Shown here: positions 5,301 to 21,203 of the stretch, piece after piece | Position numbering within the stretch: position 1 is the first letter of the stretch | How the letters are laid out: the number at the start of each line of letters is the position of its first letter | From: Sminthopsis crassicaudata | Taxonomy: Eukaryota | Assembly (NCBI RefSeq): GCF_048593235.1 | Contig: NC_133622.1 | Span: 16,926,001-16,990,000, forward strand | Direction of reading: 5' to 3' | Length of the DNA stretch: 64,000 nt | The notes under the pieces: generated by a model | Told to the model about the DNA's origin: nothing | The model's database searches: none | Seen by the model: only the letters and a program-made list of their open reading frames with translations | Position numbers and translations under genes: made by a program

Positions 5301-8005
5301 AAATTGCTATGGGAAATGAGGCAGCCAAAAACAAGAGCCTGATAAAGACTTGGTGTAAAACAGTAAAATATGTGGTAAATATCAGCCCTATACCAAAGCT
5401 CTCCTCACCCTGCCTTAGTTCTACCTCAGACTCTGTGGAGCAGAATGCTTCTCTAAGACAGAGCTAAAGCAAGTGATGCTCAGGTCCCCATTCCAGGGTA
5501 ACAGTGCTCAGGCTGAGCACAGCTGGGCTGACCTTCAGAAGTAACCCAGAGTCTGGACTTTAGATGCTCCATGGTCTATGGACCAAGCACAGAGACAGAA
5601 GGCCTTTTCTAAGCATTATGGGAAAGGTGGAGTAGAGAAGACGGGGAAAGTGAGGATTCATTGGCTAGTACGCCATGTGCAATGAAATCGAATTTTCCAA
5701 AATGCCATTTTCAATAACAAGCTTTTTTTCCTTTATTGTGTCATTTAGGCATTAAGAAATGTTACTGTTCCCTCACCAGAAAACTGCACCTCTCCCAGCT
5801 TCTCCTGGACCAATGGGAACATGACCTGGACCGTCATGAACACAACATCTAAACAGAACATTGCAAAGTGTGAGTAGGAAATCGTTCAGTTAACCCTCAT
5901 GTCCTCACATTTTAAGTCTTTTTAGAAATCCAAAATGGCTTTTTATAAAATCTGTGTGGGACCAGGGTTAAATGTTATTTGTATTTAATTTCAATATCTC
6001 CTGAGATCTTTTGGGGGGAATTATATAAACCTGTGAATTACAACCACTTTCTGTAAGAGCTTGTGCTCTATAGAACGCTCTGTATCTGGGTTAAGTGATG
6101 AAGAAGAGAGAGATGATGACGGGTGGCTGCTCTGGTTCCCACAGGCAAACACGCATTTGTGGATGTCGGTCTCTCTGACCTGACCATTGGACTCATTCTC
6201 CTGGCCCTCTCCTTGCTGGTCCTGTGCACCTGTTTGATCCTGATGGTCAAGGTCCTGAACTCTATGCTCAAGGGACAAATTGCTTCGGTGATTAAGAAGA
6301 CCATCAATACAGGTAGAATTCCTCCCTTCCTGGGCCTTCCTCTGGTCCTCTACTTTTTCTGTCTCTAAGTTTGAAGATTCTATGTTCTGATAAAATGAAT
6401 TTGTAAATAAAGAAATCATCGCTAAGGTCATTGTAAATACAAAAGGGCTCTAGAAATGTCACTGTCCTCAGTAGTTGGCCAGGGAAGATAGTCCCATGCT
6501 GCTCCATCTCCCTCCTACCTTATACACAAACACAGAAGAAGAATGTCCAAGGAAAAGGAATCAAGCGGGCAGAGCATGGCTGTGGTGGCCCTCTCTGGCC
6601 ACCCAAAATAATCAGAGACATTCTCATTAAAATCCTAAAAATCATCAAAGTTATTAATAAAATTAAAGAGCAGTTATTAGGCAAGAAGGAATGGGCTGAC
6701 TGTAAGAGATAGCACAGAGGGCCTAGAGAAAGGAATATGAATTCAAATCCTACAAGTAAGTCACTTGACTTCTGTTTACCCCACTTTCCTCCTCTGTTAG
6801 GATGAGGATAAAATCTACCTTCCAGAGTTTTTTTTGTTAGGATGAAATAGCGATTTGTCAGGACACTTGGACAAACGGGGCCTTTTCTTCTTTCCCCCAG
6901 ATTTTCCTTTTCCTTTTGCCTGGCTGAAGGACTACCTCACCATTCTTGTAGGAGCTTGGAGTACATTTCTGGTGCAGAGCAGCTCTGTGTTCATGTCTAC
7001 CATCATTCTTCTGTTTGGTGAGTTCTCCCTTTTCCCCCCATTTCCCCTTGCCCATGTCCATGTCTCCATTTTTACATTGGTCTTGCCATGCTGAGTCATT
7101 CCCAGCCAGGACTGAACCTGTATTCCCTCTCCCCCCTTAGGCATCAGAGTGATCAGCCTGGAGAGAGCGTACCCCTGGACCCTGGGCTCCAACTTCGGCA
7201 CCACCACCACGACCCTCCTGACTACTCTGGCCAGCTCTGGAAGCACTTTGCCAGATTCCCTCCAGGTCAGAATGCACAGTTGGGACCTTCTGTTCTTTCC
7301 TCAACTTCCCACTCCATCCTTCCCATAAGCACCGGGGTTCCTTTTTTGAAAGATCCTCCATATCCCAAAGGGTCGCTGGTTGCTGCCGAGGTCTCAGCTG
7401 CCTCTGAACAGTGACTTGGGGGCTAGAGAACCATCCCTAGCTCTTGTTCTCACAAGCTGAATTTCCTAAGAAATGACCAGATATCTACAGCTTGTGTCTT
7501 AATAAACAAATGAGGATGGTGAAGTTTCACCCCCATCTGCAACTAGTCCCCTGTCCCCCACATAGATTGGTATGGATAACTTCCCCCTTTGCCCTCCTCT
7601 GAGTCAGAAAACGAGAAAAGGTGGAAACAATGTCTGACTTGTTTGAAGTTTGAGTATGAATCTCAGCTGTTACTTGCTAGGTGACTGGTATAGATCCAAG
7701 CTCTGTGTGCAGTGGGGGGGGGGGGGGGGACAAAGGTCCCGGGAATATGGCAAGTGAACGAGCATCTTTTTAGATTCCAGTGAAGCTGGCATGGTGATGA
7801 TGGCAGTACATACTTTTCTTCCCTCTGATTCCCTCCCACCTAATTCCAGCTAACTGCTCTCTCCCCAAATTTCCCATTTCCACAGAGTATGAAGGAAAGG
7901 GCCACCTGGACTGAGGAAGAACAAGCATTCCTCCAATCCCCTGTCACCTATTTGAGGACATATGGACCCTTATCCTGGTCTTCCACTGTATGTAACTCTA
8001 CCTGA
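1691..8005 (+). CDS. SLC34A2: SLC34A2-like gene alpha1: exons 2-12 intact (490 aa), native terminal exon absent, putative new terminal exon (529 aa total)
   Basis: Coding exons 1691-1802, 1895-2044, 2452-2580, 3415-3558, 4047-4158, 4509-4704, 5279-5374, 5749-5869, 6145-6312, 6901-7017, 7141-7265, all GT-AG and phase-compatible. Sizes 112/150/129/144/112/196/96/121/168/117/125 match recalled human SLC34A2 except exon 3. Motifs include [48 protein letters not shown] and GSNFGTTTT. The last exon 7886-8005 is inferred. Confidence 0.88.
2264..2315. repeat. (TG)26 microsatellite, intron 3 of alpha1
   Basis: Direct count. Confidence 0.95.
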
Positions 8006-16373: not shown

Positions 16374-17774
16374 TTGGGCTGAGTTTGGAGCTCCTTCACC
16401 TGCCCCTAGGCAGCCTGGGCTGTCCCTGCCTGCCTTGGGCAGGGAGAAAGGAAAGCACTGCTTTCTCCTGGAGACCTGGGGTGTGGGACAAAGCTTTTCC
16501 TTTCTCTGCTAGTCATCCAAAGGATCTCTTTACTTTTTTCTTCTCCATAAAGCTCTACTTCTTGCTGGGCGAGGAGGTACGGGGTATCCTCTAGCATTAC
16601 TTGGGAGTACAAAGGGAGGTTTAAAAATTTTAGCCCTGTCGTTTTCTGTCTGATGTGAGCGTTCTTTTACCCATTTGTGGGTTTTGTGGTAAAACTACTG
16701 TAGGGTGGTGTTGGGTTTCTTTTCCAGCTCAATTTACCGACAAAGAAACTGAGGCAAACAGCATTAAGTGACTTGCCCAAGGTCACAAAGCTGGTGGTTG
16801 GAAGTACATTTGAATTCAAGAAGTTGTCTTCTTGACTCCAGGCCTAACATTCAGTCCACTGTGGCACCTCCCTACCTCTTTTTAATCACCAGATTTCTTT
16901 TTTTCCCCCTGAGGCAATTGGGGTTTTCACTAATCAGTTTTCACTAATCACTAAATTTCAGCTTTTGATTCTTTAGGTCTTGAGATTAAAGTAGCACAGG
17001 CTATTTATTAGATATCCAAACAATTCTCTCTGCTGTCTATTGAGTGGGCAGATTGTGCCCACAGCCCAGATTCCCAGGGATTTCACAAGGTTATCCTGAA
17101 GGGGAATCAGAGCTTCTGGGGAAGGGATGGTTGGCTATTTGCTCTACCTGGAAGGAGGGTTTTTTCTGAATGGAAGAATGGCAGCTAGGAGGCTCAGTGG
17201 ATCCGAGGACCAGCCCTGAAATCAAGACTATCTGAGTTCAAATTTGACCTCAGACACTTAACACTTCCTACCTGTGTGACTCTGGGCAAGTCTTTTAGTC
17301 CCAATTGCCTCAGCAGGAAAAAAAATGGAGTCATAGAGCTATCACTTTTCAGTAGCTGTGGGGCAATGATGTGGGCCAATTATCAGGCTTATGGGCAGTT
17401 TTTATAGGGGAATAGGCACATGGGAAGGGTTGATCCCCTTGGGTGTTAGAAGGGTGCAGAAGCTGCAACCTTCAGGCGGTGAGGGCAATAGGTTAATTAT
17501 AATAGAGAAAGTGATCCAAAATTTTAATGCAGTGTTGATGACATGGATGGCCAGAGGGAATAGAATTTAGGAGTAGTAATGGGACTGGCTATGGGGGCAG
17601 AAGATCTGCTATTTCCCATCTGGAATATATTGGGTCTCCTTCTGCAGTAGCCTCAGTTCCTTCATCTGTAAAATGATACTTGAATGAGACACTTACACGT
17701 TAGACATTAATGAGGAAGAGTAGAGAAATCCAGGAGGGCAATGACTAAGACCAGGAGTAGTGATTTATTATGAA

Positions 17775-17912
17775 GGGGCAGCTAGGTGGCACAGTGGATA
17801 GAGCACCAGCCTTGAATTCAGGAGGACCTGAGTTCAAATGTGGTCTCAGACACTTAGCACTTCCTAGCTGTGTGACCCTGGGCAAGTCACTTAACCCCAG
17901 CCTCAAAAAAAA
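17775..17912 (+). mobile_element. Young tRNA-derived CORE SINE (WSINE1-like), beta-specific, intron 1
   Basis: GGGGCAGCTAGGTGGCACAGTGGATAGAGCACC..GGACCTGAGTTCAAAT..A-tail. 16-bp TSD AGTGATTTATTATGAA (17759-17774, 17913-17928). Empty site in alpha near 1415-1427. Confidence 0.9.
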
Positions 17913-18185
17913 AGTGATTTATTATGAATTTGAGGCAGGAGAAGAGAAAGAATGAATGCAGGGAGAAGGGATATGATTTAATAGCAAAGACAGATGTATG
18001 GATGAAAATAAAAGTTTTAAATTTATAAAATGGCCCCATGAGTTCACCCTTTGTTTGTTTGTTTGTTTTTAATGAGTTTTAGAACATCTTTTTTTTTTTT
18101 TTTGGTGCTATTGTTGTGTGACTAATTGTCCTGATGCAAAATCCAGTCGGTACATATTTTCTTTTAAATTTTATTAATTCAGACC

Positions 18186-18923
18186 ATGGCAACTCCACCT
18201 CTATCTCAATTGGAAAACTCCCACTCTGCTGCTAAGAAGAGCACTGAAAATCCACTGTATCTGGAGAAGATAAAGGAAGATAAAGGAAGCCCTAGCAGTG
18301 AGTACTGTTCTCTCATGACATTGCCATCTTCCACTCCCCCCCTGGGGAAATAGACCATATTCCTGATGGTTTTTTACTTTCTTTGGCAGATAATGCCCAT
18401 TCTCCTATAAGTAAGATAGAAGTTTTGTCATCTTTTTGTGAAATGTCATTGATGGAAGAGCCAAAGATTAAAGACCTAGTGATGGAAGAGCCAGTGGTGG
18501 AGCAAAACCTACAGGATATTCCTGACTTTAGGGACTCAGGGATCAAGTGGCCAGGTAACACCAGCTCCCCTTCTGTTATTTTTCAGTTCTCTTTACTGAG
18601 AGCCTAGTATGCTTTACCCTTTTCTGTAGTGACCCTGTTTATCGATAAGGAAATGAGCTAAGAAAGAATTGACTTGCCCAGGGTCATACAATTAGTAAGC
18701 ATGTGAGATTTGATTTTAATTCAGGAAGATGAGGCAGGTAGCATTGTTCGGCTATAGAGAAGAACTGGGGCAGGACTAACAGCAGCTAAGAGCTGAACTT
18801 CCTAAGGGTGGCTAGCATCATGGGGAACATTTGGGGGCCAAAACTTCTTTACAAAAGGAAAACCCCAGCCTGCCTTTTCCTGGCCAGAAAGAGATGGGAC
18901 ACGATTCCAGAAAATGCCAGATC

Positions 18924-18973
<50 letters not shown>

Positions 18974-19462
18974 CTGCCTAAGAGCAAGCTATACATACGT
19001 GAATACAATAAACAAAGCAATATTTGGATGGCCCTTAGCAAGGGGCTGGCACATAGTAGGTGTTGAATAGAAGCTTATTCACTTCCTTTTATTTCGGCAG
19101 AAAGAGACATCACAGGGAAAATAATTGCTGTCTTCAGAGGGGTTGGAAAAGGGATCCTCAGCTGCTGGTCATGCTGCAGGCTGAACGGATGCTGCAAGAG
19201 ACACAAGAAATGTCCAGAAATGGAGGAAGATCAGGAAAAGTCATGTAAAATCCCCCTCAGGGGCCATGAGGGACATGAGGAAACTGCAGAAACAACTATG
19301 GAATTCCAAGCCAGGTATCCAGACACAGAAGGAAAGCTCAGAAGACCAGGAAGGATGGGAGAACCCTTGCGTTATTGTGGCAGCTCAGAAATCTTTGCTC
19401 TGCCTCTTTATAAGAGCGATGACTTTTTATATTCATTTTGCCAAATACATACTCTTTTCTGA
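18186..19462 (+). CDS. SLC34A2: SLC34A2-derived gene beta1: 212-aa protein without transmembrane core (N-tail fused to Cys-rich C-tail)
   Basis: Exons 18186-18297, 18390-18554, 19101-19462 (112+165+362=639 nt, open, ACCATGG Kozak, GT-AG). Exon 4 sequence [20 protein letters not shown] runs directly into SCWSCCRLNGCCKRHKKCPEMEEDQE, which resembles the NaPi-IIb tail. Confidence 0.82.
18927..18970. repeat. (TG)22 microsatellite, intron 3 of beta1
   Basis: Direct count. Confidence 0.95.
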
Positions 19463-21203
19463 ATCTCTGATTCCCTCCCACCTAATTCCAGCTCACTCCT
19501 CTCTCCCAACAATTTCCCATTTCCAAAGAGTGTGAAGGAAAGGGGCACCTGGACTGAGGAAGAACAAGCCGTCCTCAAATCCCATGTCACCTATTTGAGG
19601 TCATAGGGAGCCTTAGCCTGATCTTGCACTTTAAATAAATCTTCCAAAACACATGTATAGTCAGGAAATTGTATAGGTTTTCATTGGATAGTAAATTACT
19701 TTTATGATTCTGGTTTTATATTGCTACCATTGGAAAGAAATATTTAATTAGTAAATATCTTTATCTAAATCTATAGTCAATATAAACAAGAACATCTGTA
19801 TTATATATTGTAAATTTTGTCATGTTTACGATAATTTCATTAAAAAAATTTTCAGCAATCACTGCCATTCTTTTTGCTTAGTAGATTGTGTACATAGGAA
19901 AAGTTCCTAGCCAACTCCTTTTTACTTTCTTTCTATTTTATTTACATGTACAATACTTCCAAATACATTTCCGTATTTGTAACACTGTACAATAAAAATC
20001 AGAGATAGAAAAAAACATGAAGAAGAAAAGGCAAAGGGACAAACAAAAATGAGAAAATACTATGCTTCAATCCACATTCGGTGTCCATGGTTGTTTCTCT
20101 GGACATGGATAATTTATTTAACCCATTTTTAAGTCCTTCTTGTAATTGAAATATTTTGAATAAATAAGTTTTTCTAGAAATAATTTTTTAAGGATAGTAG
20201 AAAAGCCTGTGTTGTAGGATAGAGTAAAATATGTTCTTTTTTATCATCTTTATTGATAAACTATATAGTACATATTCTAAATATGCATTTCAAGATTCTG
20301 GGTTACAAAAATAATGTATGTTATGAAAACTTATTACGCTAAATGAAACTTCAGAAAACTTTAAAATTAAATTTCAAAAAACACAATATCTGATGGTCAA
20401 GAGAAGATAAATCATGACTTTATGTACAAATTATTCAAGCATTAAGAAAATAGCTGCTTCAATATTGCACCGTGTGTATATTCTTAAACAATTGATAAAC
20501 ATATATGGAATCTTTTATAGGACAGACCACCAATGAAAAAGTATTATAAACCACTTTACTAATAAAGTTTGAAGAAAACTCCCAATGTAATTGTGGGGTA
20601 AACAATAGAAAACACCTATTTTAAATGTGACTTTGTCAGTTGTATCTCAACTCTCCATGACTCTATTTGGGATTTTCTTGTCAGGGATAGAGGAGTGCTT
20701 TGCCATTTTCTTCTCCCGTTCATTTTTTGTACTATCTTTTAAACTTGTCCATAAGCATACTATAAATACAGAAATTTAGTGCCTCTTGGCTCTCCTTTAC
20801 ACTTTCTATTTCTTTTTTTCCATTTGGATTGGTCATGTGATCTGTGTACTTGGTGTGCTTTGACATATTTTCAGAAAGACAGATTGTTCTTGAACTAATT
20901 CAAAAGACTGAATCGCAGAGGTTATTTAACTATTTTTTTCTCTTAGAGTTCCATGATCAGATATCCCTAAAGGACTGTAATTTTTGACATGAGTCGTCTT
21001 AAATGTAGTTTTAAAGGTGCACAGACATTGATATTTACAGGAAGTAGGAAGTTCTCTTCCTCAATATGAAAAATAATGTCATGTGATCAAGGAAGAGGCG
21101 AATAAGACATTTTTAGTTTCAAAAAGGAGTTGAAATGAGAGAATTGTCAAGCTCGTCTCAGGAGGAAGAACACTCCTAGATTGTTAGAGGGAGGAGGAAC
21201 TCT

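What the first reader, a model, noticed from the sequence alone, without database searches (positions are those of the whole stretch)
19448..19462. Beta protein ends in a class I PDZ-binding motif (H-T-L-F-stop)
Seen: ATA CAT ACT CTT TTC TGA in both beta copies. Known: type II Na/Pi transporters end in S/T-x-hydrophobic motifs (TRL in NaPi-IIa, TAL recalled for human NaPi-IIb) that bind NHERF-family scaffolds. Inference: beta keeps both trafficking signals (Cys cluster and PDZ ligand) and could compete with or regulate full-length NaPi-IIb or other NHERF clients.
Basis: partly seen in the sequence, partly recalled or inferred. Interest (0 to 1): 0.7.

Follow-up and report, generated by a model that had tools for sequence, protein, structure and literature searches.

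The report
Chance PDZ-like tail on transporter remnant
A shortened leftover copy of a phosphate-transporter gene in the fat-tailed dunnart would end in four amino acids that resemble a docking tag for scaffold proteins. That ending is a recent by-product of small insertions in what was probably untranslated sequence, not the parent gene's conserved tag, so it is most likely ordinary.

Summary
The letters are there. CAT ACT CTT TTC TGA (H-T-L-F-stop) closes a 212-codon, three-exon open frame at 19448-19462 and again at 52709-52723. The two copies lie in one 33.3-kb tandem duplication (98.5% identical), so they are not independent. A third copy, 95% identical, lies elsewhere in the array.

T-L-F fits the class I pattern S/T-x-hydrophobic. 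Phe at the last position has precedents: URAT1 ends STQF and binds PDZK1, and 30 of 113 long SLC34A2-type proteins recovered here end TAF or TVF.

The ending is not kept from the parent. Every canonical marsupial, platypus and human NaPi-IIb, including the dunnart's own, ends in TAL, and that stop maps about 26-30 codons upstream of HTLF. The nearest full-length dunnart paralogues stop 19 codons earlier in another frame, or 61 codons earlier at a nonsense codon. Antechinus copies read on to ...PPI. The window's own alpha remnant has indels here and no TGA.

dN/dS along the tail is 0.6-1.0, not distinguishable from 1. No protein of 67-229 residues with this tail was found in the collection searched. 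Read evidence could not be obtained.

Verdict: a lineage-specific new C-terminus that matches a short motif, most likely by chance. Function is unproven and interest is low.

The parts
19448..19462 (+). Codons H-T-L-F plus TGA stop, beta copy 1
52709..52723 (+). The same codons in beta copy 2, part of the 33.3-kb tandem duplicate
19101..19462 (+). Beta exon C, the predicted last coding exon. The first ~59 nt are homologous to SLC34A2 exon 3; the rest derives from the Cys-rich end of the old last exon.
19159..19160 (+). Fusion breakpoint. DNA homology to alpha exon 3 stops here (...GKGIL | SCWSCC...).
18186..18297 (+). Beta exon A (ATG, N-terminal tail), GTGAGT donor
18390..18554 (+). Beta exon B (N-terminal tail, ...DSGIKW)
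19370..19382 (+). Approximate place (codons R-Y-C-G) where the canonical NaPi-IIb TAL stop maps. Inferred by extrapolating from a significant local alignment; this is not an exact column.
19411..19413 (+). TAA, out of frame in beta. It is the stop used by the closest full-length dunnart paralogue (P0174), which carries a 1-bp insertion just upstream.
7807..7832 (+). Alpha-unit remnant homologous to beta 19446 onward. It has 2-bp and 1-bp gaps relative to beta and no TGA, and it is the 3' edge of alpha's last-exon deletion.
19634..19639 (+). AATAAA 172 nt after the stop in copy 1. It reads AATAAC in copy 2 and is absent at this spot in the third copy.
52362..52723 (+). Beta exon C, copy 2. It has one coding difference from copy 1 (Glu to Gly).

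Best explanation
HTLF-stop is a young, lineage-specific new C-terminus, not the conserved PDZ ligand of NaPi-IIb. The window lies in a dasyurid tandem array of SLC34A2-like genes. In this subfamily the ancestral T-A-L stop was lost and the reading frame runs on into what was probably 3'UTR. There the position of the stop differs from copy to copy because of small indels and point mutations. In the branch leading to the dunnart beta-type and P0174-type last exons, a small complex indel created a TGA preceded by ACT CTT TTC (or CTC). The beta units are internal-deletion derivatives: exon 3 is fused to the Cys-rich end of the last exon and every transmembrane segment is missing. They happen to keep the frame that reaches this TGA. 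The match to S/T-x-hydrophobic is therefore most likely fortuitous, and the tail evolves with little or no constraint. Shown here: the sequence, the frame, the homologies and the different ends. Inferred: that the extension derives from 3'UTR, and that the ending has no function.
For: All canonical orthologues end in TAL: dunnart P0269/P0270, Antechinus, devil, opossum, bilby, wombat, koala, Dromiciops, platypus and human. Protein homology between beta and the canonical tail holds in the same frame up to 20 residues before TAL, which places the canonical stop near beta R-Y-C-G, 26-30 codons before HTLF. A DNA local alignment with E=2e-7 extrapolates to the same place. The closest relatives end differently. 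P0174 has a 1-bp insertion and stops at a TAA 19 codons earlier (...FASL). P0178 has a GAG-to-TAG nonsense codon 61 codons earlier. Two Antechinus units keep the frame but end ...PPI 11 codons later. The alpha remnant has indels and no TGA. dN/dS for the tail is 0.60 for beta against Antechinus (11 synonymous, 28 nonsynonymous; Fisher p=0.19), 0.99 for the third copy against Antechinus, and 0.60 over all 212 codons between beta copies (p=0.27). The background rate of the motif at open-frame ends in this window is 4.6%; with about 7 independent ends in the subfamily, at least one match is expected 28% of the time. No protein of 67-229 residues with this tail was found in the 5.8-billion-cluster collection, although the dunnart's RefSeq SLC34A2-like proteins are there. 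Pfam finds no transporter domain in any of the three beta exons.
Against: T-x-[LF] is exactly the family's own C-terminal pattern: 97 of 113 long SLC34A2-type proteins recovered end in T-x-L or T-x-F. Only 0.7% of random open-frame ends in the window match it, about 5% after allowing for 7 ends. Three beta copies up to 5% diverged keep the whole 212-codon frame, all splice sites and an identical last 14 residues. Four small runs hold 42-53% of the sampled words of 18100-19700, close to the roughly 55% predicted for a spliced message, which hints at expression. The dN/dS values are below 1, though not significantly. The mapping of the canonical stop rests on an extrapolated 59-61% identity alignment.
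Confidence: 0.75

Rival explanations
1. Regained, functional PDZ ligand. Beta is expressed as a soluble or palmitoylated 212-residue protein made of the N-tail and the Cys-rich tail of NaPi-IIb. Its new T-L-F end docks on PDZK1 or NHERF1, so it competes with or regulates full-length transporters and other scaffold clients.
For: T-L-F fits the class I consensus (PMC4466390). URAT1 STQF binds PDZK1 with Phe in the pocket (bioRxiv 10.1101/2025.07.21.665923). NaPi-IIb of many rodents, afrotherians and reptiles ends TAF or TVF. T-x-[LF] is rare at random frame ends, at 0.7%. The open frame and splice sites are intact in three copies. There is a possible RNA signal. A lineage-specific C-terminal extension that creates a PDZ ligand has a precedent in primate RGS14, which ends DSAL (PMC11083860).
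Against: The ending is absent from Antechinus units, P0174, P0178 and alpha. No significant purifying selection was found. No protein of this size with this tail is on record. The P0174-type copy that carries the same DNA variant lost the frame through a 1-bp insertion, so the ending was dispensable there. Only 6 Cys remain of the cluster. Neither binding nor expression was tested.
Confidence: 0.1
2. Exon C is not a translated terminal exon at all. The beta unit is a dead deletion remnant, or it only donates an upstream promoter and 5' exons to the next unit in the array, so no protein ends in HTLF.
For: The RefSeq model P0178 starts with beta-type exons A and B of the third copy, includes the first 60 nt of its exon C, and then continues in the downstream full-length unit. 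No small protein with this tail is annotated. The AATAAA 172 nt after the stop is present in only one of the three copies. dN/dS is not distinguishable from 1.
Against: The P0178 model looks chimeric: there is no GT donor at its apparent junction inside exon C, so it is weak evidence. The exon C acceptor is conserved with the exon 3 acceptor. Other AATAAA and ATTAAA signals follow within 400-700 nt in all copies. The frame is intact in three copies.
Confidence: 0.35

Closest known systems
C-terminal T-A-L / T-x-F end of canonical NaPi-IIb (SLC34A2)
   Same: Thr at -2 and Leu or Phe at 0 on a cytoplasmic tail that follows a Cys-rich stretch. 97 of 113 long SLC34A2-type proteins recovered here end in T-x-[LF].
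   Different: It is not the homologous position. The canonical stop maps about 26-30 codons upstream. Beta has no transporter domain and its ending is not conserved in the sister genus.
URAT1 (SLC22A12) C-terminal S-T-Q-F binding PDZK1/NHERF3
   Same: A class I ligand with Thr at -2 and Phe at 0. Crystal structures show the Phe in the hydrophobic pocket (bioRxiv 10.1101/2025.07.21.665923).
   Different: URAT1 is a membrane transporter with measured binding. For beta nothing has been measured, and residues -1, -3 and -4 differ (L, H, I against Q, S, K).
NaPi-IIa (SLC34A1) T-R-L binding NHERF1 PDZ1 and PDZK1
   Same: A class I ligand of a type II Na/Pi cotransporter (PMC4466390, PMC11083860).
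   Different: Arg at -1 and upstream His residues give NaPi-IIa its PDZ1 selectivity (PMC4466390). Beta has Leu at -1 and Phe at 0.
Primate-specific 21-residue extension of RGS14 ending D-S-A-L
   Same: A lineage-specific C-terminal extension that creates a PDZ ligand for NHERF1 (PMC11083860). This is the kind of event the novel reading would need.
   Different: For RGS14, binding and an effect on phosphate transport were shown. For beta they were not.

Membership tests
Class I PDZ-binding motif (C-terminal X-S/T-X-hydrophobic) | Ser or Thr at position -2 of the predicted free C-terminus | tested here: met
   ACT (Thr) at 19451-19453, in frame with the 212-codon model
Class I PDZ-binding motif (C-terminal X-S/T-X-hydrophobic) | Hydrophobic residue at position 0, directly before the stop | tested here: met
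   TTC (Phe) at 19457-19459, then TGA. Phe at 0 has precedents in URAT1 STQF (bioRxiv 10.1101/2025.07.21.665923) and in TAF/TVF ends of NaPi-IIb.
Class I PDZ-binding motif (C-terminal X-S/T-X-hydrophobic) | The protein is made and its C-terminus is exposed in the cytoplasm | tested here: inconclusive
No matching protein or gene call is on record.
Class I PDZ-binding motif (C-terminal X-S/T-X-hydrophobic) | Conservation of the ending among orthologues and paralogues | tested here: not met
   Antechinus ends ...PPI, P0174 ...ASL, P0178 ...EGH, and alpha has no stop here. dN/dS is 0.6-1.0 and not significant.
Class I PDZ-binding motif (C-terminal X-S/T-X-hydrophobic) | Physical binding to a PDZ domain that depends on the last three residues | not testable with these tools
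   Needs a pull-down, fluorescence polarisation or SPR.
Retained NaPi-IIb PDZ ligand (homologue of T-A-L) | Same alignment position and frame as the canonical T-A-L stop | tested here: not met
   The canonical end maps near beta R-Y-C-G, 26-30 codons upstream.
SLC34 Na/Pi cotransporter (Pfam PF02690) | Na_Pi_cotrans repeat domains and transmembrane core | tested here: not met
   Pfam finds no PF02690 in any of the three beta exons. Homology to SLC34A2 is limited to the N-tail, 20 residues of exon 3 and the Cys-rich tail.
SLC34A2-derived gene remnant (descent, not function) | Exons and flanks homologous to SLC34A2-like units of the same array | tested here: met
   Beta 16485-19159 aligns to alpha at 82-91%. 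The tail is 72% identical to dunnart P0174, and exon A is 95% identical to P0178.

The most novel reading that the evidence does not exclude
After losing the ancestral T-A-L, one branch of the dasyurid SLC34A2-like array re-created a family-type T-x-F ligand from former untranslated sequence. The transporter-less beta units then kept it, producing a small palmitoylatable decoy that occupies PDZK1 or NHERF1 and tunes the apical retention of phosphate or urate transporters in the dunnart.
Probability: 0.07. Interest if true: 0.6.

Novelty: new member of a known kind. Interest (0 to 1): 0.2.

Why it matters
If the ending were a working PDZ ligand on an expressed, transporter-less protein, it would be a natural dominant-negative regulator of NHERF/PDZK1 scaffolds, born by gene-fragment fusion. 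It would also be an example of a PDZ ligand regained from what was probably UTR. The evidence instead shows the ordinary fate of tails in redundant tandem copies: the conserved T-A-L is kept only by the canonical gene, and the paralogues acquire a different end in almost every copy. The useful outcome is negative. The motif should not be read as a retained trafficking signal. Any follow-up on beta should first establish that the transcript and the protein exist.

Tried and rejected
- **Small-protein word searches.** Searches with exon C (121 residues) and with the longer open frame 19067-19459 (131 residues) found no protein of 67-229 residues.
- **Family and structure scans.** Pfam and PDB sequence scans of the beta exons gave nothing above threshold. 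The only Pfam line was FAM163 at 17 bits, below its 28-bit cut-off, and I rejected it.
- **Representative search.** A search with an alpha exon returned only 50%-identity cluster representatives. Most of the 150 listed were short fragments, and none of the full-length ones carried a normal T-x-[LF] NaPi-IIb ending. It did supply P0027, which seeded the profile search that recovered the marsupial proteins.
- **Profile building.** Adding alpha exons 3, 4, 8 and 11 to the profile failed because MAFFT misplaced them. I dropped those rows.
- **Read evidence.** There is therefore no read-level evidence. No letters of 16760-16797 were sent to any search tool afterwards; they sit only in a local BLAST database of the whole window made.
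- **Exact look-ups.** The look-up of the 80-residue ATG-ORF of exon C found no gene call.
- **'SSEIFAL' as the old T-A-L.** I considered this and rejected it. The canonical end maps about 7-10 codons upstream of that A-L, and the match is only two residues.
- **Joined 212-residue model.** It was not searched or folded. The exons were joined only inside local scripts, for the frame check and dN/dS.

Full report
**Observation**

The window reads ATA CAT ACT CTT TTC TGA at 19445-19462 and, letter for letter, at 52706-52723. These codons close an open frame built from three exons with standard splice signals:
- exon A, 18186-18297, followed by a GTGAGT donor;
- exon B, 18390-18554, followed by GT;
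- exon C, 19101-19462, preceded by ...tttcggcag.

Together they make 639 nt, that is 212 codons plus the stop.

The two copies are not independent. The window is a tandem duplication with a 33.28-kb period and 98.5% identity. The two exon C copies differ at a single coding base.

**What the gene is**

Each 33-kb period holds two units.
- The 'alpha' unit carries SLC34A2-like exons up to about exon 11.
- The 'beta' unit aligns to the alpha 5' region at 82-91% (beta 16485-19159), and that homology stops abruptly at 19159.

Exon C starts with 20 residues homologous to SLC34A2 exon 3 (...[16 protein letters not shown]). It then jumps into the distal part of the Cys-rich tail of the old last exon. 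Beta is therefore an internal-deletion derivative with no transmembrane segment. Pfam finds no Na_Pi_cotrans domain in any of its three exons.

Only 6 cysteines of the cluster remain, against 18 in the dunnart's canonical tail.

**Relatives**

A profile made of a possum SLC34A2-like protein plus five alpha exons recovered the marsupial family. The canonical orthologues all end in T-A-L. They are:
- dunnart XP_074129202/203 (P0269/P0270);
- Antechinus P0162, devil P0165 and opossum P0157;
- bilby, wombat, koala and Dromiciops;
- platypus and human.

Among 113 recovered proteins of at least 640 residues, 60 end TAL, 24 TAF, 6 TVF and 7 T-x-L of other kinds. The family signature is therefore T-x-[LF].

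The dasyurid subfamily closest to the window has lost that signature. Its annotated ends are ...FASL (dunnart P0174)...YEGH (dunnart P0178)...SSFW (Antechinus P0169) and ...TMDI (devil P0177).

**Where the ends come from**

I fetched the loci of P0174 (L001), P0178 (L002), P0169 (L004), the canonical Antechinus gene (L005) and the dunnart TAL-type paralogue P0273 (L006). I then aligned the last exons.
- **P0174** shares beta's DNA (86% identity) but has a 1-bp insertion after ...GSSEVF. It therefore stops at a TAA that is out of frame in beta (19411-19413), 19 codons before beta's stop.
- **P0178** has GAG-to-TAG 61 codons before beta's stop.
- **A third beta-type unit** (L002:4001-5263, 95% identical) keeps the 212-codon frame and HTLF-stop.
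- **Two Antechinus units** keep the same frame through ...CQIH but continue AFLLPDSYSFPPI-stop. Around the dunnart TGA the sequences differ by several small indels.
- **The alpha remnant in the window** resumes homology exactly at beta 19446. It reads TACATACT--TTTCTTCC-CTCTGATT, without a TGA.

The TGA-bearing variant is thus a derived state shared by the beta-type and P0174-type exons. It is in frame only in beta.

**Position of the parental stop**

Protein homology between beta and the canonical tail holds, in the same frame, up to a point 20 residues before T-A-L. A DNA local alignment, canonical Antechinus against beta, gives 61% identity over 182 nt with E=2e-7 and ends 40 nt before the canonical stop.

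Both results place the canonical stop near beta codons R-Y-C-G (about 19370-19382). That is 26-30 codons upstream of HTLF. The MAFFT alignment agrees.

The downstream part of beta's frame therefore most probably derives from former 3'UTR. The only direct hint for this is a collinear 12-of-13 match around TACATGCC, which is not significant on its own.

**Constraint**

dN/dS was estimated by the Nei-Gojobori method.

| Comparison | dN/dS | Counts or test |
|---|---|---|
| Tail, beta vs Antechinus | 0.60 | 11 synonymous, 28 nonsynonymous; Fisher p=0.19 |
| Tail, third beta copy vs Antechinus | 0.99 | |
| All 212 codons, window beta vs third copy | 0.60 | 6 synonymous, 14 nonsynonymous; p=0.27 |
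| All 212 codons, the two window copies | 1.28 | 1 synonymous, 5 nonsynonymous |

None of these differs significantly from neutrality.

**Chance**

In this window 4.6% of all open-frame ends match [ST]-x-[LIVFM] and 0.7% match T-x-[LF]. With about seven independently derived ends in the subfamily, at least one match is expected in about 28% and about 5% of cases respectively. The narrower pattern is therefore mildly unexpected but far from decisive, and it was noticed after the fact.

**Chemistry**

The class I consensus is X-S/T-X-hydrophobic. Leu at 0 and Thr at -2 make the canonical contacts in NHERF1 PDZ1 with NaPi-IIa (PMC4466390). Phe at 0 is a proven alternative for PDZK1, as shown by the URAT1 KSTQF structures (bioRxiv 10.1101/2025.07.21.665923), and it occurs naturally in NaPi-IIb of many species.

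The pattern-level claim therefore holds. A precedent for a lineage-specific extension creating a PDZ ligand exists in primate RGS14 (PMC11083860). The Cys stretch of NaPi-IIb is reported to affect sorting and to be a palmitoylation site (PMC9335355, citing McHaffie 2007).

**Existence of the product**
- No protein of 67-229 residues with this tail was found in the 5.8-billion-cluster collection, which does hold the dunnart RefSeq SLC34A2-like proteins.
- No gene call for the exon C ATG-ORF is on record.
- Four small runs of one study (0.65-1.6 Gb, kind guessed as RNA) hold 42-53% of the sampled words of 18100-19700. The three exons plus a short 3'UTR would make up about 55%. This is suggestive only.
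Splice junctions and transcript ends could therefore not be examined.
- The RefSeq model P0178 uses beta-type exons A and B of the third copy as its 5' end. Beta units may serve, or be mis-modelled, as upstream exons of the next gene.

**Conclusion**

The ending fits a class I PDZ pattern, but it is not the retained parental ligand. It is a dunnart-lineage new terminus created by small indels in an unconstrained tail of a transporter-less gene remnant, and its expression as protein is unproven.

- Most likely it is fortuitous (about 0.75).
- A regained functional ligand remains possible (about 0.1).

**Limits and rules observed**
- The joined 212-residue model was not searched or folded. The exons were searched separately by reference.
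- The exons were joined only inside local scripts, for the frame check and dN/dS.
- Places 16760-16797 were not sent to any search tool.
- The identification of the species rests on the scan's earlier notes, and on a 94-95% identical beta-type copy in a locus (L002) of Sminthopsis crassicaudata assembly GCA_048593235.1.

Noticed in passing
L002:4001-5263 and L002:16336-27319: The RefSeq-type model P0178 (679 residues) begins with beta-type exons A and B and the first 60 nt of a beta exon C. It then continues inside exon 3 of the next, full-length unit, with no GT donor at the apparent junction. It looks like a chimeric model, or a hint that beta units supply upstream 5' exons.
   Followed up: partly
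L002:27194-27319 and L004:28940-29023: The dunnart P0178 last exon and a third Antechinus unit stop at the same codon (...EGH-stop, GAG to TAG). This subtype of unit therefore seems older than the dunnart-Antechinus split.
   Followed up: no
window 7807 versus 19446: The 3' edge of the deletion that removed alpha's last exon falls exactly at the I-H-T codons of beta. Beta 19160-19445 is the piece that alpha lacks.
   Followed up: partly
window 18926-18972, 2290-2350; L004:11674-11732; L005:2939-2979: A (GT)n microsatellite sits in the intron before exon 3 in beta, in alpha, in the Antechinus paralogue and in the canonical Antechinus gene. It is an old, persistent microsatellite.
   Followed up: no
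proteins P0027, P0151, P0152, P0153, P0154: A second marsupial SLC34A2-like subfamily (possum, wombat, Dromiciops, wallaby, devil) ends in L-A-L, I-A-L, M-A-I or V-S-L. Thr at -2 is replaced by a hydrophobic residue, which gives a class II-like rather than a class I end.
   Followed up: no
protein P0176 (Antechinus, 661 residues) against dunnart P0273: The fast-evolving duplicate of the canonical gene ends T-A-F in Antechinus but T-A-L in the dunnart. This Leu/Phe switch at position 0 within dasyurids mirrors the TAL/TAF split seen across vertebrates.
   Followed up: no
L004:26145-28910: Antechinus has an annotated 256-residue product with only a weak Na_Pi_cotrans hit, just downstream of P0169. 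Its end abuts a Cys-tail homologue that has an early stop. It is another truncated unit of the array.
   Followed up: no
window 19634-19639 versus 52895-52900: The first AATAAA after the beta stop is intact in copy 1 but reads AATAAC in copy 2, and it is missing at that spot in the third copy.
   Followed up: partly
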